IMG/VR virus record: IMGVR_UViG_3300035181_000471
Span: 124,001-188,000 of that record
Strand: one strand, 5' to 3'
Length of the DNA: 64,000 nt
The notes below the pieces were generated by a model that searched no databases, was not told where the DNA came from, and saw only the letters and a list, made by a program, of their open reading frames with translations. Numbering within the stretch: the stretch's first letter is position 1; the number at the start of each line of letters is the position of its first letter. Below, in pieces: positions 1,565 to 19,813 of the stretch. The translations under genes and the position numbers were made by a program.

Positions 1565-4266
<2,702 letters not shown>

Positions 4267-4275
4267 GGATATACT

Positions 4276-7155
4276 ATGCCCCAGCCTTTAGTCAATAATA
4301 TCAGAAAGCAACTTGATCTTCCAACTTGGGAGTGGATGCGTTTTGCCCCAGCCGTTTCCGCTGGTGGATCTGCTTCCTGTGCCGCTGATAACTCTAACTT
4401 CCATGTCCAGCATGGGAGATACATTTACTATCTAATCAGTGCTACAGGTTTTTGGCGCTATGATACTTGGACTGACAGCTACGAACAGTTAACCTCTCCC
4501 CCAATCGCACCCCTAACATGGTCCTCCATGAAATTCAGTGGATCTATGGGTTTCGAAGGCTTAGTTCTAGGTGCGACCTCTACAACGCTAACCATACCCG
4601 CCTACTCTGGTCAAGCACTAAAATCCTTTGATATTCGTATCGTAGGTGGGACTGGTATGGGTCAAAGAAGAACTGTGTCGGCAGTAGCCGAACCAGTAAC
4701 CGCCGATACTGGCGTTCCAACCGCCGTAAACAATGTCCTTGGCGCTATTACTATCACGGATACAACTAAGAACTGGGTTGTCAACCAGTGGGCTGGGTAC
4801 CAAGTTAGAATCAGTTTCGGGGCTGGTGTGGGTCAGGTTCGCAGAATCATTTCAAACACGGCCACCGTTTTGACTCTCGGTGACATCGGCTGCTCTGGCA
4901 TGAATAACTTCTGTAACCCTGGTATTACCTCTCCTGCTATTTCTGCTGTAGCAGGTACACAGTCCATCTACACCATCGAGTCCTCAGTAGTGACCGTAGA
5001 TAACGCCTGGAGTGTAACCCCCGACATCACCTCTGTTTTTAGAGTTGAATCTGGAATGATCGTGTTGGCATCCAGCACTGCAACCACGCCTTTCTACACC
5101 CTACAATACTACGACATTCTATCAGATACCTGGTACATCAGAACCGCTAATACTTTGAATGTTGCTCTTGCTGGATCAGACGGAACTATTGAGAGATGCG
5201 CTGAGAATTCAACCCTTTGGGATAGGGGCAGTGCTTCTGCTGGATCTACTTCGACTACTCTTGTTGACCTGACAAAGAACTGGACCCCTAATCAGTGGGC
5301 TGGGTATTGGGTTAGAATTTTCTCTGGAACTGGTGAAGGTCAGCTAAGACAGATTGTCTCCAACACTCAAACGGGGTTAACTTGGTCCGTAGCTGGAACC
5401 GCCCCAGATACTACATCTGACTACCTAATTGATGGATTTGATTCTGGGACTGCCACTAGCGGGTCTACCACTACCATCGTTGACACCGCTAAAAACTGGG
5501 CTGTAAACCGCTGGGCTAACTACATGGTCAGAATGACTTGGGGAACTGGCAAAGGCCAGCTAGTCCAAATTGCCTCTAACACAGCAACAACTCTAACCTT
5601 TGTCCGCCCTGTCCCAGTCTCTCCAGACTCCACAACTACTTACTCCTTGCAGGGAGATGTCGATAAGATTTACTTAGCTATTCAGGCTAACGCCGCAACT
5701 TTGATTCATAACAATGACTGTGACATCGCTTCTTACGGAAGAATGTATGACCAGGGCATTGCCTCCAATGCAGTAGTGATCTATGGCTCTGGCATCTCGC
5801 CTTATAAGCCTATTGCCATCGCTTCCGCCACTCATGCCGCTACTACAGCTACCATCACCACAGCAATCTCTCATTGTTTAAAGGTTGGTATGACCATTAC
5901 GGTAAAGGGCATGACTGACGCCAATTTCAACACAACGGCGACAATTCTAACCGTCCCTTCTGCCACCACATTCACCTACACAATGGCTGGAACTCCCTCC
6001 GCTGACACGCTTGCTGGCACTCAGTCTACCACCACCCTAACTGACTCCTCAAAGAATTGGACTGTTAACCAGTGGGCTGGCTACATGGTCTATATGACCA
6101 CTACTGCTGTAACCGCCGCCACCGGACTTGCGACAGGGCAGGCTCTCCAGATTGCCTCTAATACGGCTACTACTCTTACATTCGTAGCTGGAACTGCGCC
6201 TATTAACGGAGTGTCACGCTATGTCATCACTCCAAGAAGCGTGATTGGAGCTATGGATCATGGTATCGCAACTGGAACCCAGTCCACTGTTCTTTTAACC
6301 GACACCAATAAGACTACAGCTTTTACTGGATCAGTGCCCAACGGAAGCACCATCCTAACTGTATCCACGACTCCAGCAGGAATCCTTTCACCTGGGATGT
6401 CTGTTACTGGAACTAGCATCCCAACTGGAACAGTGATCGTCAATCAGCTAACTTCCACCATGCCTAACGGCTCCCCAGGTGGGCAGGGAACCTACACTCT
6501 TTCCGCCGCCGCAACAGCCCTCATTTCCGGTGCCTCCATCACTCCAGGATGGGTGGTCAATGCCTATGCTGGCCGTAAGTGTAAGATTATTGGGTCTACT
6601 GGTCAGTCGCAAGAATCTACTATTACTGCCAACACAGCCAATACCCTAACCCTAACCACTTTAACCACAGCACCAGTAACCCTAGTTTCCTCCTATGTCA
6701 TTCTTGAGCCTTCAGTCCGTGGAGCCGGAATAGCTATGAACTGGGTTCCTGGACTCTCTAGTCCAGCAGGACAGACCTTAGCACAGGGAAACGCAGGAAA
6801 GTTTTTAGTAATTCCTCGTGGTGGCGGTGTAGTAGGATTTGATAAACTAGACATCACCACAGACCACTGGAACTTGATGCCTATAACTCCTCAGCTAGAA
6901 ACACTGACCACAGGCTCCATGTACTCCTACGATGGTGGGGATAGGATCTACTTCACTAAAGATGTCACCAACCGTTGCTACTACTTGGATGTCAACACCA
7001 ACACCGTCCATGCCGCTGGTCTATTCCCTTACTCGGTTGGTTCCGCCATCGTTGGTAACCGAATGGAAATCTTCACCACCGCTGACGGCTTAAAATTCTT
7101 GTGGTTGAACCGTCATGCAAACTTGGAGTGCTTCAGACAACTTCTCTTCTACTAA
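4276..7155 (+). CDS. repeat-rich virion appendage protein (about 6 copies of TDxxKNWxVNQWAGY repeat, propeller-like termini)
   Basis: Repeats such as ITDTTKNWVVNQWAGYQVRI, VDLTKNWTPNQWAGYWVRI, VDTAKNWAVNRWANYMVRM and TDSSKNWTVNQWAGYMVYM; Thr/Ser-rich. Confidence 0.7.
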   Translation: MPQPLVNNIRKQLDLPTWEWMRFAPAVSAGGSASCAADNSNFHVQHGRYIYYLISATGFWRYDTWTDSYEQLTSPPIAPLTWSSMKFSGSMGFEGLVLGATSTTLTIPAYSGQALKSFDIRIVGGTGMGQRRTVSAVAEPVTADTGVPTAVNNVLGAITITDTTKNWVVNQWAGYQVRISFGAGVGQVRRIISNTATVLTLGDIGCSGMNNFCNPGITSPAISAVAGTQSIYTIESSVVTVDNAWSVTPDITSVFRVESGMIVLASSTATTPFYTLQYYDILSDTWYIRTANTLNVALAGSDGTIERCAENSTLWDRGSASAGSTSTTLVDLTKNWTPNQWAGYWVRIFSGTGEGQLRQIVSNTQTGLTWSVAGTAPDTTSDYLIDGFDSGTATSGSTTTIVDTAKNWAVNRWANYMVRMTWGTGKGQLVQIASNTATTLTFVRPVPVSPDSTTTYSLQGDVDKIYLAIQANAATLIHNNDCDIASYGRMYDQGIASNAVVIYGSGISPYKPIAIASATHAATTATITTAISHCLKVGMTITVKGMTDANFNTTATILTVPSATTFTYTMAGTPSADTLAGTQSTTTLTDSSKNWTVNQWAGYMVYMTTTAVTAATGLATGQALQIASNTATTLTFVAGTAPINGVSRYVITPRSVIGAMDHGIATGTQSTVLLTDTNKTTAFTGSVPNGSTILTVSTTPAGILSPGMSVTGTSIPTGTVIVNQLTSTMPNGSPGGQGTYTLSAAATALISGASITPGWVVNAYAGRKCKIIGSTGQSQESTITANTANTLTLTTLTTAPVTLVSSYVILEPSVRGAGIAMNWVPGLSSPAGQTLAQGNAGKFLVIPRGGGVVGFDKLDITTDHWNLMPITPQLETLTTGSMYSYDGGDRIYFTKDVTNRCYYLDVNTNTVHAAGLFPYSVGSAIVGNRMEIFTTADGLKFLWLNRHANLECFRQLLFY

Positions 7156-7185
7156 ATAGAGCTTTTGAACTCTATTTAGTAGAAG
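7146..7185. repeat. perfect 16-bp inverted repeat with 8-nt loop
   Basis: CTTCTACTAAATAGAG-cttttgaa-CTCTATTTAGTAGAAG; overlaps the stop at 7155; no U-tract on either side. Confidence 0.85.
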
Positions 7186-7198
7186 GCAGAATTAATTC

Positions 7199-10100
7199 AT
7201 GTCATTACCTTGGCTCCAACCAATTGAAGGCGTGTCCTTTAACCAAATTACCGGGCTATCCGATGCCGCTCCGCTTATCGAGGGTGTAGCATCGCCTGGA
7301 ACCTCTACGCTTGTCGCTAGAGCAGACCATGTGCATCCCGCTGGCGGTGGAGCCGCAGGTGCTACGGGAGCTACCGGAACCACAGGTGCTACCGGAGCAA
7401 CCGGAAACCCTGGGGCCACTGGCCCAGCTTCTACTGTAACAGGCCCTACCGGAGCGGCTGGAAACACGGGTATGACTGGTATGACTGGGGGTACCGGAGC
7501 CGTAGGCTTGACTGGGAACAGCGGTGCTACTGGTGGCATGGGTATGACCGGAATGACAGGTGTGACCGGAGCTACTGGCCCAGCCTCTACTGTAACCGGA
7601 GCAACTGGAGCCTCCGGCCCAACTGGTCTAACAGGGGCGACTGGAAACACAGGAAACAGCGGAGCTACTGGGGCTACTGGTTCTACTGGTAATGTTGGTG
7701 CTTATACCATGAATACTGCTAGACTTCTTGGTAGAACTACAGCAAGCACTGGAGCCCCAGAAGAAATTTCTGTTTCCGCCCCTTTATCCTTATCTTCTCT
7801 CGTTTTATCAATTCCTGCTGCAACAACCTCCGCGAATGGCTACCTAACTAGCACTGACTGGAATACATTTAACGGTAAACAGGCGGCGTATACTAATCTA
7901 ACAACATTCGGTTCTCTGCCTAATGCCATTGGTTATCTTTATAATGATGGCTCTGGTGTTCTATCCTATTCTACTACTTTAGGTGGTGTATCAAGTTTTA
8001 ACACAAGAACAGGTGCAGTAACTCTAAACTCTTCTGATGTAACTACCGCCTTAAACTATACTCCAATTAACAAGGCTGGGGACACCTTCACTGGAGCCGT
8101 TGCCTTGAATACGGGGGCGTTATCCGCCGCCAGTTCCGCGTATTCTTCTGTGATTCTGGTGGGTGGCTTGGGATCACCTTGGGCTGGAAAGACATACTTC
8201 GGAGATGGCACTGGGTGGAAGTATGCCTTTTCTCGTCGAAGCGCAAGCGTGGATACAGATGTCCTAACTATCCAGGACAACGGAAACATCAGTTCTTTGG
8301 GTAGTATCTCTGCTGGTGGACAGATAACTGGCACACAGTTCAATGGTTCTGGTGCAGGATTAACAGGGACAGCAAATTCATTAACTGCTGGGGGTGCCCT
8401 GGCTGCTACTCTCTTACTAAACGGTAACAATTGCCAAGGTATTATCAGGTCAAATGGAGATTCTTCACCTAACCTCCATCTTGACCCTACTACTGGCGCT
8501 AATTCTGTATATCTGAATTTCTATGCTGGGACTGGTGGAACCAAATTCTGTAACGGCTCTAATGGTGTTGTGGCTTCTATTGATGGAAGCGGTAACGGTA
8601 ATTTTAATGGCTCTATATCAGCCATCCAAATATACGGTAAATCAAATTTATCAAATCAACAAGCACCATTAAATTATTCCTATATTGGTAGTACAGATGA
8701 TAATGCAACTGATACTGTTGTATTGCTGCACCCTGCCTACAATGGAACAATAATCAATAAGTATCTATTTGATGGCACTATCACATTCCAGCGAGGTAGC
8801 ACTGGATCATCCAATATATCTGATACTTATGTAGTAAAAACTTCTACCGCATATACTTCAAATACTGGTTCTATAATTTCAAGAAATACCGCTAATACTG
8901 CCAATCTCATAACTTGCACATATAACAGTGTGCTTTATGTTGCTATATATGTTCCTAAAACATCATCAAGATCCATATATTACAAGGGTGATCTACTATC
9001 TACGCTTACCAGCCCATTAGTATTATCTGCTTCCTCTGTTAGCAATGTTTCAGTTCTGACACAAGATAATACTAATCTTGGTGGTTCCATATCAGCTACA
9101 TCAGGAACATTTAATACTGGTGGAGCTACTGTCTATGCCGGATTAGAAGTAAAGGCTTCTGGAAATAATACAATCGGTGGTAATAGATCCTCGGTAATCA
9201 TCCATCGCGGGGTTACTACTGGAAATCAATCGGGATTTCTTCAATTCGGAACTCCTGGCGGCACAAGTGTTTGGTGTTTGTTTAATGACTTTGGTGTCGC
9301 AGGAGGAAATGATTTTACTATTTTTAATGTTGCTGGAACCAACGCTCCCGCATTATCCTTCTCTTCTACAAGTGCCGCTACCTTCGCATCATCCGTCAGT
9401 ATGGGTGCGCTAGTAGCTACTTCAGGAACAATAAATGGTCCTGTTGAAATAGGCACAGGAGCGGATAAAACCTCAATAAATTCAGGTTCTATAGGATTTA
9501 ATAGAAGAACCTATGATGGTGCTATATATGATAACACTGGATATGCCTATCAGTGGCAACATACAAAAAGCACAACAGCCGCTTCGGATTATTTAGCACT
9601 ACAAGTATATAATCCCAGTGGCACACAAATAACACCTGTAGCTATTAAGGTTGATGGGAACGGTAATACGCAATTAAGTGGTTCCTTATCGGCTACTAGT
9701 GGGTCTTTTACACTCCCGGTCGTATGCCACTCCATGTCTGCGGGTGCTAATTTTACTGGTAATTGGTCTGGAGCTAACTACTGGGGTATTGGTCCCATTT
9801 CAGCACATGGAATTAGGCTTGGGATGGTAGATGCTTCAAATGCGTTTATGGCTGCCCCCGGAGATATGTCTTTACAGATAGATGCTTCTGTAAGTATGAG
9901 TGCCCTAACTGCTAATTCTGTCTCTATCAATCCAGTTACATTGGATTTATCTGGATTAGATCAAGCTACTTGGTATCCAGTTACTATAGGTATTCCCGTA
10001 AGAAGAAGAACCAGAATGAGAATCATGGTATCTCTTGATTCTGGAACTGTTCCTAATTGGTCCACCCATAGTCAAGGTTTCTCTGTTCTATGTGATTGGA

Positions 10101-11254
10101 CTTCTAATGGTAATGGATGGGGAATTGTTCCTGTCACAAGAACAATTCATACCTACACTTATAGCTGGTCTAATGTAAGTCCTGTTGGTGGCATTGCCCA
10201 AATGTCTAATAGCTCCCTTGAGGTAGTTTATCTAAGGGGTGGTGGTAAGTATTTCTTTGAGGCAGATTATCCAGTTACACCCGTTATTCAGACTACCAGC
10301 TACACAACTAACTCCCAGACGGTTTCTCCATCTACCTCACTAATAAATGATGTGTTTTCATCTGCTAATGCTCCTGTTGCTTTTGGTAGTGGAACATTTA
10401 GTGGTGCCCTATCAGCCTCTAACTTCTCTGGTTCGTCTTCAGGGACAAATACAGGCGACCAAACTAACATCTCTGGAACTGCTTCTAACATTACAGCTTA
10501 TACAATCAACCAAAATCTAGGAGTAGGAAATCAGGTAACATTTGATAGTGTAATTACTGGTAACAATGGTAATGGAACTAATTTTAGAATAGGGGATGAT
10601 TCTTGGATTGGTGATATTAATGTAGCAAATACATTCAGAGTTCAAGGTGTTCAGAATGCCGCCGCTGGTTATATTTGCTTTGGTAATGGTGATACTACAG
10701 CTTTAGGTAGAACTGGAACAGGAGCCTTAACTTATGGCGGTAACACTGTTATTCATTCTGGTAATATCGGTTCTCAAACAGTAGCTACAGCAGGAAACTT
10801 AACAGGACATGCTGCTGGTTATGCTTATGCTGATGGTGGAACAGCCACTAATCTATCAGGTGGTTCTGTTAATGCTACTACGGGAAGTTTTAGTGGTAGC
10901 GTGGGCTCTACTGGTGGAAGTGTATATGCTGCCGCAGGAGATGGTAATGGGTTTTATTTGTGGGGAAACTCCCTAAATTACTCTGTCTATATGTCCTCAG
11001 CAGCTAATGGAACCTACGGTGGAGGTTGGAACCAAAGTGGCAGTCCCGCTTCGGATTACAATATGTATTTCAACATGACTGGTTACGCTCGTGGGTATGC
11101 CTTCAAGAATAATGGAGCCGTATTTGCTCAACTTATTCCTAAGACTGGCGGGTCCTATGTTGGAGGTATGTTGATTCTTCGTGATGTTACAAATAACAAC
11201 GGCTACGGTATCTACATGGATGCCGGAGTAATGAAAGTGATCCAGGTGACCTAA
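7199..11254 (+). CDS. long tail fibre (collagen-like N-terminal segment, mosaic Gly/Ser/Asn-rich modules)
   Basis: G-x-T repeats at about 7358-7700; fibre-type motifs [39 protein letters not shown] and [12 protein letters not shown]. Confidence 0.8.
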
Positions 11255-11874
11255 TGACTTATGCTGCTACACTAGACTATGTTGCTCCTACTACATCTAC
11301 GGGGAAGGAGCTTTACGCTAGTAATGAGTACAACACCTCTACAGGAGCAATCACCAGACCTTCTACAACCTTTGTAGGAGCCTTCACGAAAGATGGGTCC
11401 TCTCGTATTGCATATATTACGGCTTGGACCGTTCAATGCACTTGTGATCTAAACTGTGCTAGTGATGGAGGGTGCTGTCCGGGTCCTTTGGTGCCTATCA
11501 CAATGGCAGATGGGTCACAGAAGCTTGCTAAGGATCTTCAGGCTGGTGATAAGGTCATGGGATACCACGAAGCTGAGAGCCGTTGGGGGGGATTTAGGGT
11601 TAGTGCCGTGGCGCGAGGTATGAACCACCTCTACCGAGTAGAACTAGAATCTGGGATTCGGATGGATTTTGCTCGTAACCATAGACTCCTAGACACTAAT
11701 AACAATTGGTTGCGTGTGGATAGTCTGCGTGTTGGAACTAAACTTTTTGGACGCCTTGGAGGAGTCGTAAAGGCTGTCGAGGACATTGGTTGGGGAGAAG
11801 TTATTAAAATTACTGTGGAAGATGCTCAAACCTACGACACTTGTGGCCTCTTGAATCACAACATTAAGAACTAG
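11254..11874 (+). CDS. Cys-rich N-terminal peptide fused to a Hint (bacterial intein-like) autoprocessing domain
   Basis: QCTCDLNCASDGGC then CPGPLVPITMADGSQKLAKDLQAGDKV (Hint block A), block-B His (ARNH) and terminal HN-IKN; TAATG coupling to the fibre gene. Confidence 0.8.
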   Translation: MTYAATLDYVAPTTSTGKELYASNEYNTSTGAITRPSTTFVGAFTKDGSSRIAYITAWTVQCTCDLNCASDGGCCPGPLVPITMADGSQKLAKDLQAGDKVMGYHEAESRWGGFRVSAVARGMNHLYRVELESGIRMDFARNHRLLDTNNNWLRVDSLRVGTKLFGRLGGVVKAVEDIGWGEVIKITVEDAQTYDTCGLLNHNIKN

Positions 11875-11881
11875 GATCACA

Positions 11882-13249
11882 ATGCACCCAGATTTTGTCC
11901 GCGTCAACTACACAGATTTTGATATTATTTACGCCCCTCGTCTTGATGTGGGGATTAAAGTAAGCCCAGGTGCAGATGGAGATGCTGAAATTGCCGCATT
12001 AGATTTACCAGCCTATGAAGCTCTTGGTGACCCACCATACTTTGTTGATCTAGACTCAAACATATCATTGAAGGACTATGATCAGATTACTTTGGGTATT
12101 ACCAGTAAATGCAACTTGCGTTGTGTCTATTGCTATTGTGATGGTGGTGAACATGATGATACGATGGAAAATAATGACATCATGACAGTGATCGAACAAA
12201 TCCCTAAAATGAGCAAAAAGGAGGTTAAGATCACTCTTTTCTCAGATGGGGAAACTATGGTTGAGCGAAGCACTCTCTTTGCTGCGCTGGCTAGAATTAG
12301 AGAGATTGAAACCGAGTCAGGAAAGGACATTACGGTTATCCTTGTGACTAACGGCTCACTGATCAACGAGTACTCCATTGAGTTTCTAAAAAAGGGGGTT
12401 AATCGCTTTCAGGTCAGCTACGATGGTTGTCCCGAAGCTCAAGGTGTAAATAGACCTAATGCTTTGGGCCAGTCTTCTCACGATGCGGTAGCAAAAGGTA
12501 TCAGGCTCATTGAAGCTGCGGGAATTCCATACCACCTACGAGGAACGGTTACCAGGAAGACAGTCAGACTAATTAGTGAGTCAGTTCGGTACATTCAAAA
12601 CAATTTCCCTCGTGCCCTTGGTTATCATGTTGAACCCGCAACTGGAGAGGGGCGACAAGATGGCCTTGATCCCTCCGTTGAAGATTTCTGTCGTGAATTC
12701 GTCAAGGCCCATAAAATCTCTCGGGATCTTGGGTTCAAACTCATCACAAAAGTTAATCTGGTTCCGAAGAAGGGGTTCTGTGGGGCCACAACTGGTCCAG
12801 GTTTATATATCACGCCTAATGGGGACCTGACAGGGTGTTCACGAGTCACACGCAAGGATGACCCGCTTGCAGATAAGTACATCTATGGTTCGATTAATCT
12901 GAAGACCGGAGATCTTCATTTTGACTATGATAAAGCCAAGAAACTTCGTCAAGCCACAGTTGTTGATGCCTACCCGGACTGCGAGGGTTGTTTTGCTCGT
13001 GCTAGCTGCGCTGGAGGTTGTTCAGCTATCAGAGATCAAGGTGGTCATGACTTTGATTGTGAGTCTACTAGAATCCTGACCAAATATCTAATCCTAGATC
13101 GCTACGAGAACGGAGAGTGTCGTAACCAAGTCATTGATCGAGAACTAGCGTATAAGAAGCCTAGGGTTGAGATTAAGTTTACCCCATCACAAATGCAGAT
13201 GGCACAGCCGACTGGCTTCTCAGTCTCATTTTCAGCCGCTAATCACTAG
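11882..13249 (+). CDS. radical SAM enzyme with C-terminal SPASM domain
   Basis: CNLRCVYC (CxxxCxxC), VTNGSL, VSYDG; SPASM cysteines FCGA...GDLTGC...CEGCFARASCAGGC...DC. Confidence 0.92.
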   Translation: MHPDFVRVNYTDFDIIYAPRLDVGIKVSPGADGDAEIAALDLPAYEALGDPPYFVDLDSNISLKDYDQITLGITSKCNLRCVYCYCDGGEHDDTMENNDIMTVIEQIPKMSKKEVKITLFSDGETMVERSTLFAALARIREIETESGKDITVILVTNGSLINEYSIEFLKKGVNRFQVSYDGCPEAQGVNRPNALGQSSHDAVAKGIRLIEAAGIPYHLRGTVTRKTVRLISESVRYIQNNFPRALGYHVEPATGEGRQDGLDPSVEDFCREFVKAHKISRDLGFKLITKVNLVPKKGFCGATTGPGLYITPNGDLTGCSRVTRKDDPLADKYIYGSINLKTGDLHFDYDKAKKLRQATVVDAYPDCEGCFARASCAGGCSAIRDQGGHDFDCESTRILTKYLILDRYENGECRNQVIDRELAYKKPRVEIKFTPSQMQMAQPTGFSVSFSAANH

Positions 13250-13261
13250 GAGAACAACACT

Positions 13262-14701
13262 TTGACCTCACCTCGCTTTAATCATACTGTTATTACACTT
13301 CTTGATGGTCGAGTCGCCATTATTGGTGGCAATGAAGAAGGAGTTCTTGCAGACATCGAAATCTTTGACCCTAATAGTCAGAAATTCACTATAGCTGGCG
13401 GAGTTTTGACTTCTTCACGCCATTCGCATTCAGCCGCGCTGACCGATACTGGAGAAGTTGCCCTCATTGGTGGAGGTACAGCCTCAATTGATACCTATGA
13501 CCCTGTAACTGATAAAGTGCAAGTGCGTAATGCCAACCCTTATCAAGATAGTGCCCTACATATTAAGTCTAAGGCCCTGAACATTGGCAATCACACCATT
13601 CTCGTTTACGGTGGGTATACAGCTAATAGATTCTACAATCCCGTATTGATTGACACTGAGACTTGGGTTTCCACAGAGATGAACACCGTCAGTCAGCATC
13701 GTATAGACTTCGCCATTCTTAGACTCAAAAATGGAAAGGTGCTGATTAGTGGTGGTTGGAATAGTGAAGGTGTTAAATCAGACATTGTGCAGTTTGATCC
13801 AGTTGATACCAGTTTTGTCACCCTGGCGTTGAATTTGACCTCTCCTCGCAAAAATCATACTATGGTTGAATACCCCAACGGTAAAGTTGGTGTCTATGGT
13901 GGTTATGATGTTAATGGTGTACCCCAGAAGACCGTAGAGGAACTAGACCTGTCTGCTTTGACAAGCACCACCAAGGGAAACCTAATTGATTCAAGGGCAA
14001 ATATGCAGTCTGTGTGTCTGCCAAATGGCTACACACTCCATGTCGGAGGCACAAACCTCAACAACTATGCCACAAACGCCTTGATGGTCTATGATCCTGA
14101 CACGATGAGCAGCGGCTACACGGGCTCGATTATGGGACTCAGTGCAAATTTAGCTGTAACCGAAATCCCTAAGGGTCTCTTGTTGGTCACTGGCGACTAC
14201 ACTGAGATACTAGACCCTCAGTCGAGTATCTTCATAACCTACCACACTACCTGGGTTCCGACTAGTGAGGAGATCCAGTTTACTGCCAATGGTGCTACTG
14301 CGGGTCTGGTATGGAGTTGTGATGTCGGTACAATTGACCAGACTGGCCTCTACCACACCCCAAATATGCCTGTAGCTGATGTTGCCTACATCACCGCCAC
14401 AAATAATGCAGGTCAGAAAGCTATAGCACACATAAACTTCCTCAAAGCGGTCGTAAACATTACAGGCCCTACGCTCACTTCCTTCAACACTCCGGCTCAG
14501 TTTAGCGCCAGTGTAGCTTACTATCGTACGATCCAAACTGTAACTTGGTCCATTGATGATTCTACTAAGGGGAGCATAGACGCCACAGGTCTCTTTACCC
14601 CCGCCCAGGGCTTCACTGGTACGGTTCGAATCAAGGGCACCTGTGACGCCAATCCGGTACACTCCTCCACCTTTGACCTAATTGTTGATCTTGCTGGCTA
14701 A
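13262..14701 (+). CDS. Kelch-repeat beta-propeller with two C-terminal Ig-like (Big2-type) domains
   Basis: TTG start with GGAG SD; Kelch repeats (PRFNHTVITLLDGRVAIIGG, PRKNHTMVEYPNGKVGVYGG etc.); VWSCDVGTIDQTGLYHTP and VTWSIDDSTKGSIDATGLFTP. Confidence 0.85.
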   Translation: MTSPRFNHTVITLLDGRVAIIGGNEEGVLADIEIFDPNSQKFTIAGGVLTSSRHSHSAALTDTGEVALIGGGTASIDTYDPVTDKVQVRNANPYQDSALHIKSKALNIGNHTILVYGGYTANRFYNPVLIDTETWVSTEMNTVSQHRIDFAILRLKNGKVLISGGWNSEGVKSDIVQFDPVDTSFVTLALNLTSPRKNHTMVEYPNGKVGVYGGYDVNGVPQKTVEELDLSALTSTTKGNLIDSRANMQSVCLPNGYTLHVGGTNLNNYATNALMVYDPDTMSSGYTGSIMGLSANLAVTEIPKGLLLVTGDYTEILDPQSSIFITYHTTWVPTSEEIQFTANGATAGLVWSCDVGTIDQTGLYHTPNMPVADVAYITATNNAGQKAIAHINFLKAVVNITGPTLTSFNTPAQFSASVAYYRTIQTVTWSIDDSTKGSIDATGLFTPAQGFTGTVRIKGTCDANPVHSSTFDLIVDLAG

Positions 14702-14853: not shown

Positions 14854-14873
14854 ACTTTTCAACTCTCTTGTGT
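14854..14873 (+). promoter_or_regulatory. candidate late promoter motif
   Basis: ACTTTT-caact-CT-cttgt-GT, ending immediately before ATG 14874. Confidence 0.45.

Positions 14874-19813
<4,940 letters not shown>

What the first reader, a model, noticed from the sequence alone, without database searches (positions are those of the whole stretch)
11254..11874. Stand-alone Hint domain likely releases a 74-aa peptide with a reactive C-terminus
Seen: Hint block A begins at C75 (C-P-G-P-L-V-P-I-T-M-A-D-G), the block-B His is retained (ARNH, with the usual Thr replaced), and the protein ends HN-IKN, so there is no real C-extein. Established: bacterial intein-like and Hedgehog Hint domains form an N-terminal thioester that hydrolyses or is captured by a nucleophile. 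Inference: the N-terminal peptide could be cyclised, lipidated or covalently joined to a fibre subunit. The adjacent fibre lacks a recognisable peptidase-S74 chaperone, so this gene may fill that assembly role.
Basis: partly seen in the sequence, partly recalled or inferred. Interest (0 to 1): 0.65.

Follow-up and report, generated by a model that had tools for sequence, protein, structure and literature searches.

The report
Self-cleaving Hint fused to radical-SAM substrate
A small phage tail-fibre-module gene joins a cysteine-rich segment, which always travels with a neighbouring radical-SAM cross-linking enzyme, to a complete intein-like self-cleaving domain, a combination I found in no paper or curated family.

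Summary
ORF 11254-11874 (206 aa) carries a genuine Hint domain at residues 75-203. In an 84-sequence family alignment C75, H143, H202 and N203 are invariant. The aligned AlphaFold2 model has pLDDT of 90 or more over the domain, and its best PDB matches are a Tetrahymena BIL domain and mini-inteins. The domain is type-A-BIL-like: it ends HN with no +1 nucleophile, then three residues, with a near-universal Lys.

The next gene (11882-13249) is a radical SAM/SPASM peptide maturase. The N-extein ends in a conserved Cys-rich motif of the form C-T-C-D..C..D-G-G-C.

- All 6 independent Hint lineages with a Cys-rich pre-Hint segment have such an rSAM next door. None of 9 Gly-linker lineages does.
- The N-extein is homologous (E 3e-12) to the Hint-less C-terminal tail of a protein beside the closest rSAM relative.
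- Bacterial relatives of the rSAM sit beside tiny C-[ST]-C peptides.

Best reading: the rSAM cross-links the Cys-rich segment, probably by thioethers, and the Hint domain then removes itself. The chemistry is untested. The idea that the gene replaces an S74 chaperone is not supported, because related cassettes sit beside S74-bearing fibres.

The parts
7199..11254 (+). Collagen-like tail fibre gene (1351 aa). Its stop overlaps the start of the target ORF (TAATG). This is context and probably translationally coupled.
   Evidence: Pfam Collagen and PHROG tail-fibre families, with no Peptidase_S74 hit. The C-terminus is 52% identical to the gene upstream of the homologue in L007. The junction sequence is conserved.
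11254..11475 (+). N-extein, residues 1-74. It has no predicted confident fold and is conserved.
   Evidence: 62% identity to P0001. E 3e-12 to the C-terminal tail of P0045, a Hint-less protein beside the rSAM homologue P0004. pLDDT is below 50.
11437..11475 (+). Cys-rich motif, residues 62-74 (C62, C64, C68, D71, C74). Proposed substrate site of the neighbouring rSAM/SPASM enzyme.
   Evidence: C64, C68 and D71 are invariant in the Cys-rich subfamily alignment A2. The presence of this kind of segment coincides perfectly with an adjacent rSAM. Similar C-[ST]-C motifs occur in small ORFs beside bacterial rSAM homologues.
11476..11862 (+). Hint (type-A BIL-like mini-intein-like) domain, residues 75-203. 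Cys75 is the nucleophile, His143 is block B, and His202-Asn203 form the C-terminal end.
   Evidence: Invariant residues in A1. pLDDT>=90. Foldseek and PDB profile matches to BILs and mini-inteins.
11863..11874 (+). Three-residue C-extein I204-K205-N206 plus the stop codon.
   Evidence: The sequence itself. K205 is at least 90% conserved in the family. Lys is at +1 or +2 in 151 of 161 Hint ends, and C/S/T is at +1 in only 11 of 161.
11882..13249 (+). Radical SAM/SPASM peptide maturase (455 aa), the proposed modifying enzyme.
   Evidence: Pfam Radical_SAM 4e-16. The best NCBIfam hits are all thioether or cross-link RiPP maturases (PapB 9.6e-33, SCIFF, QhpD, StsB), all below their family cut-offs. 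CxxxCxxC lies at residue 77 and the SPASM CxxCx5Cx3C at residue 367. The Cys ligands are invariant in A3. 67% identity to the gene downstream of the homologue in L007.
13262..14701 (+). Kelch beta-propeller plus Ig-like (Big_2) protein. It is a neighbour and is not part of the conserved core.
   Evidence: Pfam Kelch families and Big_2. No equivalent gene was called beside the other cassettes.

Best explanation
The gene encodes a three-part precursor that belongs to a phage tail-fibre module.

Step 1 (inferred from gene linkage and homology): the radical SAM/SPASM enzyme encoded 8 bp downstream modifies the Cys-rich end of the N-extein (residues 62-74). The most likely modification is intramolecular thioether (ranthionine/sactionine-type) cross-links from Cys sulphur to carbons of nearby residues such as the conserved Asp71.

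Step 2 (inferred from a complete, invariant catalytic set and a confident Hint fold): the Hint domain (75-203) makes an N-to-S acyl shift at Cys75 and cyclises Asn203. It thereby cuts itself out, as type-A bacterial intein-like domains do. The cross-linked 74-residue product is released either with a free C-terminus or re-joined to the I-K-N tail.

Step 3 (inferred from synteny only): the product acts with the tail fibre, as a tip component, adhesin or assembly factor. The gene is translationally coupled to a fibre gene, and related cassettes always sit in fibre modules.

The Hint domain would then be a built-in, protease-free way of removing the part of the precursor that is not wanted in the mature product.
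For: Hint fold and catalytic residues.

Type-A BIL behaviour (HN end, no +1 nucleophile, thioester plus Asn cyclisation, cleavage dominant, splicing possible) is established: PMC4031507.

rSAM/SPASM identity.

Linkage: every Hint locus with at least 2 Cys in the 30 residues before Cys1 has an rSAM of this kind within about 1.3 kb. These are the window, L007, L016-18, L019-20, L028, L055/L072, L067, L068-69 and L070. None of 43 Gly-linker loci does. Counted as lineages this is 6 of 6 against 0 of 9 (exact p about 2e-4; the merged-cluster count gave 3e-4). Within one cluster of Hint domains at least 60% identical, only the Cys-rich members have the rSAM. The association occurs in at least two separate rSAM clades.

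Substrate homology: the N-extein matches the Hint-less Cys-rich tail of P0045, which overlaps the start of rSAM P0004, the closest relative of the window enzyme. Sister rSAMs P0005 and P0007 are followed by 46- and 52-aa ORFs with the same C-[ST]-C motif.

Precedent: PapB makes Cys-Xn-Asp thioethers (PMC9413430), and a SPASM enzyme installs ranthionines on an adjacent Cys-rich protein (PMC13692751).

The target is the only protein with such a motif in the 221-kb record, which has only one rSAM of this kind.

Fibre context.
Against: No chemistry was tested. Neither the cross-link type nor whether any cross-link forms can be read from sequence.

The rSAM scores far below every NCBIfam equivalog cut-off (113.8 against 340 bits for PapB), so its reaction is not assignable by membership.

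The complex prediction of rSAM with the N-extein gave no verdict. The N-extein has no confident fold.

Block-B Thr is replaced by Ala, which might slow the acyl shift.

The order of events (modification before cleavage) is assumed.

P0045 shows that the Cys-rich module can exist without a Hint domain, so the Hint is not needed for recognition and its specific benefit is unexplained.

The virus is uncultured, so virion association is inferred only from gene order.
Confidence: 0.55

Rival explanations
1. Conjugation rather than simple release. The Cys75 thioester is resolved by an amine, either the conserved Lys just after Asn203 or a Lys of the fibre. The N-extein, cross-linked or not, then ends up isopeptide-linked, as the Tetrahymena BUBL BIL2 domain links a ubiquitin-like domain to lysines.
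For: The best structural match is BIL2, which forms a Lys-epsilon-to-C-terminus isopeptide (PMC8616854). Lys at +1 or +2 is found at 151 of 161 family Hint ends, and K205 is at least 90% conserved. Invariant His-Asn shows that C-terminal cleavage matters, which simple Hedgehog-like release would not require.
Against: The structural similarity is generic to all Hint domains: DnaB inteins score almost the same. A conserved Lys could equally serve catalysis, folding or recognition. No target lysine can be named.
Confidence: 0.17
2. The Hint domain works as in the Gly-linker relatives, as a C-terminal self-removing module of tail proteins. The Cys-rich stretch is then only a disulfide or metal-binding knot, and the rSAM acts on some other substrate.
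For: Most family members have no Cys-rich segment and no rSAM, yet keep the same catalytic set. BIL2 is zinc-regulated. The cross-link chemistry is unproven.
Against: The perfect co-occurrence of Cys-rich segment and rSAM across 6 lineages and 2 rSAM clades. The same motif occurs in small ORFs or tails beside related rSAMs without any Hint. There is no other candidate substrate in the genome record.
Confidence: 0.13
3. One reading: the gene replaces a missing peptidase-S74 intramolecular chaperone and helps the adjacent fibre to fold or trimerise.
For: The window fibre has no S74 hit. The gene sits in the position that fibre-assembly or adhesin genes often occupy, directly after a fibre gene, in several lineages.
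Against: Related cassettes coexist with S74-bearing fibres (L028; L068). This does not explain the rSAM or the Cys-rich motif. There is no similarity to known fibre chaperones (no PHROG hit).
Confidence: 0.1
4. A decaying remnant: a C-terminal Hint module split from the fibre gene by a frameshift and no longer functional.
For: Most relatives are fused to large tail proteins. Gene callers did not call the full ORF.
Against: The split, with an identical TAATG junction, is conserved in a phage only 52-67% identical. dN is 0.30 with saturated dS across both parts. All catalytic residues are intact. Small stand-alone versions recur in other lineages.
Confidence: 0.03

Closest known systems
Type-A bacterial intein-like (BIL) domains (Amitai, Dassa and Pietrokovski; C. 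thermocellum BIL, PDB 2lwy)
   Same: Hint fold. Cys1, block-B His and a C-terminal His-Asn are present, with no nucleophile at +1. Both sit in variable surface-type proteins rather than conserved enzymes. The expected chemistry is thioester formation plus Asn cyclisation, with cleavage dominant.
   Different: Here the domain lies at the extreme C-terminus, with only 3 residues after it. A near-universal Lys sits at +1 or +2. The hosts are phage tail proteins. In this subfamily a Cys-rich segment and an rSAM partner are present. Pfam and PHROG models do not reach threshold for it.
BIL2 domain of the Tetrahymena thermophila BUBL1 locus (PDB 6y75/6tmm)
   Same: It is the best structural match (E 1.8e-10). 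It is a Hint domain that turns a thioester into a link to a lysine side chain. This is a possible parallel to the conserved Lys.
   Different: It is eukaryotic and flanked by ubiquitin-like domains. Sequence identity is 20%. No rSAM is involved. Whether the phage domain forms isopeptides is unknown.
Ranthipeptide/sactipeptide systems (PapA/PapB, SCIFF/ScfB), QhpC/QhpD and CrpA/CrpC
   Same: An rSAM/SPASM enzyme is encoded next to a Cys-rich substrate with Cys-Xn-Asp/Asn spacing. Substrates can be proteins as well as short peptides.
   Different: The substrate here is fused to a self-cleaving Hint domain instead of carrying only a leader that a protease removes. It is phage-encoded and sits in a tail-fibre module. 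The enzyme is below every named family's cut-off.
Hedgehog C-terminal autoprocessing (Hog) domains
   Same: A Hint domain at the C-terminal end releases the N-terminal part through a thioester that a nucleophile captures (one search matches 1at0 and 6tyy).
   Different: Hog domains have a sterol-recognition region and lack the terminal His-Asn. Here the protein ends 3 residues after an invariant His-Asn.
Peptidase S74 intramolecular chaperone of phage fibres and tailspikes
   Same: A C-terminal, self-removing module of phage tail fibre proteins. The wider Gly-linker Hint family occupies the same position on tail proteins.
   Different: The fold and chemistry are unrelated. The two coexist in L028 and L068. 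In the window the Hint is not fused to the fibre.

Membership tests
Hint (Hedgehog/intein) superfamily | Hint beta-fold | tested here: met
   The AF2 model has pLDDT>=90 over residues ~73-203. Foldseek gave 68 PDB hits at E<=1e-3, and every listed match is an intein, BIL or Hedgehog domain, with TM up to 0.85 on the target. The profile against the PDB gave 5e-16.
Hint (Hedgehog/intein) superfamily | N-terminal Cys/Ser nucleophile and block-B His | tested here: met
   C75 and H143 are invariant in 84 sequences. The block-B Thr is Ala here, and the family consensus is Ser.
True (class 1) intein | Cys/Ser/Thr at +1 of the C-extein | tested here: not met
   +1 is Ile204. Across the family C/S/T is at +1 in only 11 of 161 ends.
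True (class 1) intein | Insertion inside a conserved host protein that is restored by splicing | tested here: not met
   Only 3 residues follow the domain, and 90 of 148 relatives end within 15 residues of HN.
Type-A BIL domain | C-terminal His-Asn retained, with no +1 nucleophile | tested here: met
   H202 and N203 are invariant, and +1 is hydrophobic or Lys. The definition is taken from PMC4031507.
Type-A BIL domain | Match to the published A-type BIL sequence blocks | not testable with these tools
   No A-type BIL profile is in the libraries. The nearest proxy is the profile hit to the C. thermocellum BIL 2lwy at 2.8e-15, which is no better than DnaB inteins.
Type-A BIL domain | Autocleavage or splicing activity | not testable with these tools
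   Needs expression and mass spectrometry.
Hedgehog-type Hog domain | Sterol-recognition region after the Hint module, and no terminal Asn | tested here: not met
   The protein ends 3 residues after an invariant His-Asn.
rSAM/SPASM peptide maturase (neighbour gene 11882-13249) | CxxxCxxC radical SAM cluster motif and the 7-Cys SPASM motif | tested here: met
   C77/C81/C84, C367-x2-C-x5-C-x3-C380, and C300, C319 and C393. These are invariant or nearly so in A3. Pfam Radical_SAM 4e-16.
PapB family ranthipeptide maturase (NF047865) | Score above the NCBIfam equivalog cut-off | tested here: not met
   113.8 bits against a cut-off of 340. The same holds for SCIFF, QhpD, StsB and the others. The enzyme works like these, but is not a member of any named family.
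RiPP-type rSAM substrate (ranthipeptide/sactipeptide-like) | Cys-rich core encoded next to the maturase, recurrently | tested here: met
   6 of 6 Cys-rich lineages have the rSAM, against 0 of 9 Gly-linker lineages. Homologous motifs lie beside related rSAMs.
RiPP-type rSAM substrate (ranthipeptide/sactipeptide-like) | Enzyme-substrate recognition | tested here: inconclusive
   The complex prediction gave no verdict (score 0.02, mark 0.32).
RiPP-type rSAM substrate (ranthipeptide/sactipeptide-like) | Thioether cross-links in the product | not testable with these tools
   Needs MS of the co-expressed product.
Peptidase S74 intramolecular chaperone | S74 domain in the fibre or in this gene | tested here: not met
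   There is no Peptidase_S74 hit in the fibre 7199-11254 or in the target.

The most novel reading that the evidence does not exclude
Phages have joined two post-translational chemistries in one small gene. A radical-SAM enzyme ties the Cys-rich end of the N-extein into a thioether knot. The Hint domain then uses its thioester, together with the near-universal Lys next to the scissile Asn, to ligate that knot covalently through an isopeptide onto the short tail or onto a tail-fibre subunit, rather than merely releasing it. This would be a protease-free and ATP-free way to build a covalently decorated receptor-binding tip. The much larger Gly-linker family would then mark a general Hint-mediated covalent assembly step in phage tails.
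Probability: 0.15. Interest if true: 0.9.

Novelty: new variant of a known kind. Interest (0 to 1): 0.72.

Why it matters
Both halves belong to known kinds: BIL-type Hint domains and rSAM/SPASM cross-linking of Cys-rich substrates. Their fusion and obligate gene linkage were not found in any paper searched, nor in Pfam, PHROGs or NCBIfam.

If the model holds, it would be the first natural case in which a RiPP-like modified segment is freed by its own intein-like domain instead of a leader peptidase. It would also place radical-SAM cross-linking in phage tail-fibre modules.

The work exposes a large, unannotated clade of C-terminal Hint domains on phage tail proteins (GpJ-like and others). This clade has an invariant catalytic set and a conserved Lys after the Asn, and its role in tail assembly is open. 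A self-cleaving, rSAM-compatible tag could also be useful for making cross-linked peptides.

All members come from metagenomes. Routine gene calling cuts off the key part of this gene, which may explain why it has gone unnoticed.

Tried and rejected
- Single-sequence AlphaFold2 gave pLDDT 32 and was useless. The aligned run was used instead.
- Megablast of the locus against GenBank phages gave no match. tblastn of the target there found only generic intein hits. Two typical Gly-linker Hint domains found nothing in isolated phages. The rSAM found only distant hits in unannotated gut phage contigs.
- The search for related loci found no viral relatives with the rSAM as query. With alignments A1 and A2 it failed for lack of a conserved block. 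It was replaced by a degenerate DNA pattern for the C-terminal motif, which gave 45 true members.
- Complex prediction of the rSAM with N-extein residues 1-80 gave no verdict (score 0.02). It is not used as evidence either way.
- The ESM Atlas look-up of the N-extein gave no usable hit.
- PHROGs has no family for the target or for its N-extein.
- A Cys-rich tail on an 892-aa protein elsewhere in the genome was considered as a second substrate. I rejected it because it looked to me like a zinc-ribbon-type C-x2-C ... C-x2-C tail rather than the C-[ST]-C motif; this judgement came from reading the printed tail and no family search was run on it.
- A programmed frameshift fusing the fibre and the Hint gene was considered. 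No slippery site is evident at the junction, and the split is conserved in L007.
- dN/dS could not be computed because dS is saturated.
Full report
**What is in the sequence**

The window is part of a 221-kb IMG/VR virus record, estimated 77% complete. Its DNA is held by sediment and microbial-mat metagenome runs.

The ORF at 11254-11874 (+, 206 aa) is real, and its ATG is the first possible start. That ATG overlaps the stop of a 1351-aa collagen-like tail fibre gene as TAATG. Eight bases after its own stop begins a 455-aa gene, followed by a Kelch/Big_2 protein and then another collagen-like fibre.

**Is it a Hint domain?**

Curated libraries alone are equivocal. Pfam hits are below threshold (1.4e-4, 7e-4, 0.023), PHROGs gives nothing, and NCBIfam matches an intein segment at 1.3e-8.

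The word-indexed protein search found only one full-length relative, P0001 (61% identity), plus truncated calls of the window's own gene. Because so few relatives appeared, I ran the exhaustive HMMER search. It returned 680 relatives at E<=1e-3.

- An 84-sequence alignment has C75, H143, T193, H202 and N203 invariant, and P78 and K205 at least 90% conserved.
- With this alignment AlphaFold2 gives pLDDT>=90 for 128 residues, roughly 73-203, while residues 1-70 stay below 50. The single-sequence run had failed.
- Foldseek against the PDB returns only Hint domains. The best is BIL2 of the Tetrahymena BUBL1 locus (6y75, E 1.8e-10), followed by DnaB and gp41-1 mini-inteins, the C. thermocellum BIL (2lwy) and Hedgehog.
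- The family profile hits the same set by sequence, from 5e-16 downwards.

**What kind of Hint domain?**

It is not an intein. Residue +1 is Ile and only three residues follow. Among 148 relatives with a complete C-terminal end, 90 stop within 15 residues of His-Asn, and C/S/T at +1 is rare (11 of 161 ends).

It fits the definition of type-A bacterial intein-like domains: a His-Asn end, no +1 nucleophile, a thioester at residue 1 plus Asn cyclisation, cleavage products dominant and splicing possible through the freed amine (PMC4031507).

Two features stand out.
- A Lys lies at +1 or +2 at 151 of 161 ends.
- The hosts are phage tail proteins. P0059 and P0060 carry GpJ-type Phage-tail_3 domains, and all 45 matches to a degenerate DNA pattern for the C-terminal motif in IMG/VR are true family members on viral contigs.

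Pfam does not recognise the domain in these proteins. The named database members are 'hypothetical protein'. No isolated phage in GenBank matched.

The downstream gene is a radical SAM/SPASM enzyme.
- Pfam Radical_SAM scores 4e-16.
- C77-x3-C-x2-C and the SPASM C367-x2-C-x5-C-x3-C motif, together with C300, C319 and C393, are present. They are invariant or nearly so among 34 relatives.
- Its best NCBIfam matches are all peptide or protein cross-linking maturases: PapB 9.6e-33, Nif11-type, SCIFF, QhpD, StsB and CefB. Every one is far below its family cut-off.

In most relatives the Hint domain follows a Gly-rich linker. In the window it follows a Cys-rich stretch (C62, C64, C68, D71, C74), which is conserved in P0001 and in a subfamily (P0049, P0054, P0061, P0062, P0063, P0071). 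C64, C68 and D71 are invariant in that subfamily.

**Linkage test**

I translated all fetched loci in six frames. I then scored them with an HMM of the Hint family and an HMM built from the rSAM relatives.

Every locus with at least 2 Cys in the 30 residues before Cys1 has an rSAM adjacent or one gene away, with E-values from 5e-12 to 2e-107 where more than a fragment of the gene lies on the contig (5e-5 for the cut-off piece on L018). These loci are the window, L007, L016-18, L019-20, L028, L067, L068-69 and L070. L055, whose stored locus was too short, also has one 1.2 kb upstream in its 153-kb record. None of the 43 Gly-linker loci has one.

Counted by lineage and linker type this is 6 of 6 against 0 of 9, an exact p of about 2e-4. 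The cruder cluster count gave 3e-4. The sharpest contrast lies inside one cluster of Hint domains at least 60% identical, where only the Cys-rich members carry the rSAM.

In a quick maximum-likelihood tree the window enzyme forms a supported clade (99) with P0004 and four other Hint-neighbour enzymes. The L016/L028/L072 enzymes form a second clade (100). The association therefore exists in at least two rSAM lineages. That tree is the quick version, not the finished careful search.

**Substrate homology**

P0004 is the closest relative of the window rSAM. Its start overlaps the end of a 455-aa protein, P0045, whose last ~75 residues align with the window N-extein (34% identity, E 3e-12). P0045 ends in a Cys-rich C-S-C-N ... 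C-G-C-D tail with no Hint domain.

The sister enzymes P0005 and P0007 lie in bacterial-type contexts, one of them beside an ABC transporter. Each is followed immediately by an ORF of 46 or 52 residues with the same C-[ST]-C-[DNQ] pattern.

In the L028 type the pre-Hint segment is a run of C-x-C-D-x-N units. This is the repetitive look of known multi-cross-link substrates.

PapB makes Cys-Xn-Asp/Glu thioethers with n = 0-6 (PMC9413430). A SPASM enzyme was recently shown to install ranthionines on an adjacent Cys-rich protein (PMC13692751). Within the 221-kb record the target is the only protein with such a motif, and there is a single rSAM of this kind.

**Context**

The cassette is always in a tail-fibre module.
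- In the window and in L007 it follows a collagen-like fibre, with 52%, 61% and 67% identity across the three genes and an identical TAATG junction.
- In L019 and L067 the upstream genes match T4 gp37-type distal fibre families.
- In L028 and L072 the cassette follows very long fibre genes.

In L028 that fibre ends in a typical S74-type chaperone sequence, and in L068 a Peptidase_S74 protein is just upstream.

Only the Cys-rich-Hint gene and the rSAM are shared by all versions. The other neighbours differ: a Kelch protein here, a 220-aa unknown in L016 and L028, and a QueC-like gene in L067 and L068.

**Mechanism proposed**

- Shown: a complete Hint catalytic set in a confident Hint fold; a complete rSAM/SPASM neighbour; strict co-occurrence of that neighbour with a Cys-rich pre-Hint segment; and homology of that segment to Hint-less rSAM-associated tails and peptides.
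- Inferred: the rSAM cross-links the Cys-rich segment, most likely with thioethers to Asp/Asn-type acceptors. The Hint domain then excises itself through the Cys75 thioester and Asn203 cyclisation, freeing a 74-residue cross-linked product that works with the fibre.
- Open: the fate of the thioester, which could be hydrolysis, re-ligation to I-K-N as in type-A BIL splicing, or capture by a lysine. The conserved Lys and the BIL2 precedent for Lys-epsilon isopeptide formation (PMC8616854) keep the last option alive.

The complex prediction of rSAM with the N-extein returned no verdict and is not used.

**Novelty**

Full-text searches combining Hint or intein terms with radical SAM, RiPP, ranthipeptide, phage or tail fibre found nothing describing this arrangement. 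That library lacks most subscription journals, so a prior description cannot be excluded.

I rate the finding as a new variant of known kinds, of clear interest: a BIL-type Hint fused to an rSAM substrate, and a large unannotated clade of C-terminal Hint domains on phage tail proteins.

Noticed in passing
L004:1-2361: A viral contig encodes a collagen-like (G-X-Y) protein followed by four tandem Hint domains, each ending VHNK or HNKD directly before the next Cys. This is a different architecture from the window's.
   Followed up: no
window 11503-11874 (M84 to the stop): Public gene calls for this locus start at M84 (P0002, 123 aa) or later (P0047, 70 aa). Predicted proteomes therefore lack Cys75 and the Cys-rich segment. 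Conservation in P0001 and P0045 shows that the long form is the real one.
   Followed up: yes
window 1565-3973, 7199-11254, 14868-17519, 17528-19813: Four separate collagen-like tail-fibre genes lie within 18 kb. The phage appears to carry several fibre types.
   Followed up: partly
window 13262-14701: A Kelch beta-propeller protein with a C-terminal Ig-like (Big_2) region lies directly after the rSAM. No equivalent gene was called beside the other cassettes, and its role is unknown.
   Followed up: no
G000 (own genome) 198147-200354 (+) and 82096-84768 (-), outside the window: Two further open frames match the Hint profile weakly (2.6e-10 and 8e-5). They may be ordinary inteins in other genes.
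   Followed up: no
L012:6295-6435 and L013:6360-6518: Tiny Cys-rich ORFs (46 and 52 aa) with C-[ST]-C motifs directly follow bacterial relatives of the rSAM. L010-L012 also hold an ABC transporter. In L013-L015 the pair lies beside PycTM-like and CHAT/NB-ARC/TPR genes. This may be an undescribed RiPP family.
   Followed up: partly
L067:5244-5807, L068:5127-5690, L069:3742-4305: A 187-aa QueC-like gene follows the rSAM in three loci, two of them near-identical, of the Cys-rich-Hint cassette.
   Followed up: no
L016:2749-3429, L028:5566-6228, L072 about 6990-7690: In the second cassette type, a conserved 220-226-aa protein lies between the rSAM and the Cys-rich-Hint gene; the L028 copy gave no PHROG match and no Pfam family is on record for the L016 copy.
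   Followed up: no
L009:28-2269: The Hint-less Cys-rich-tailed protein P0045 follows a gene with a weak pilin-type (Shufflon_N) hit. The module may therefore also decorate non-phage surface fibres.
   Followed up: no
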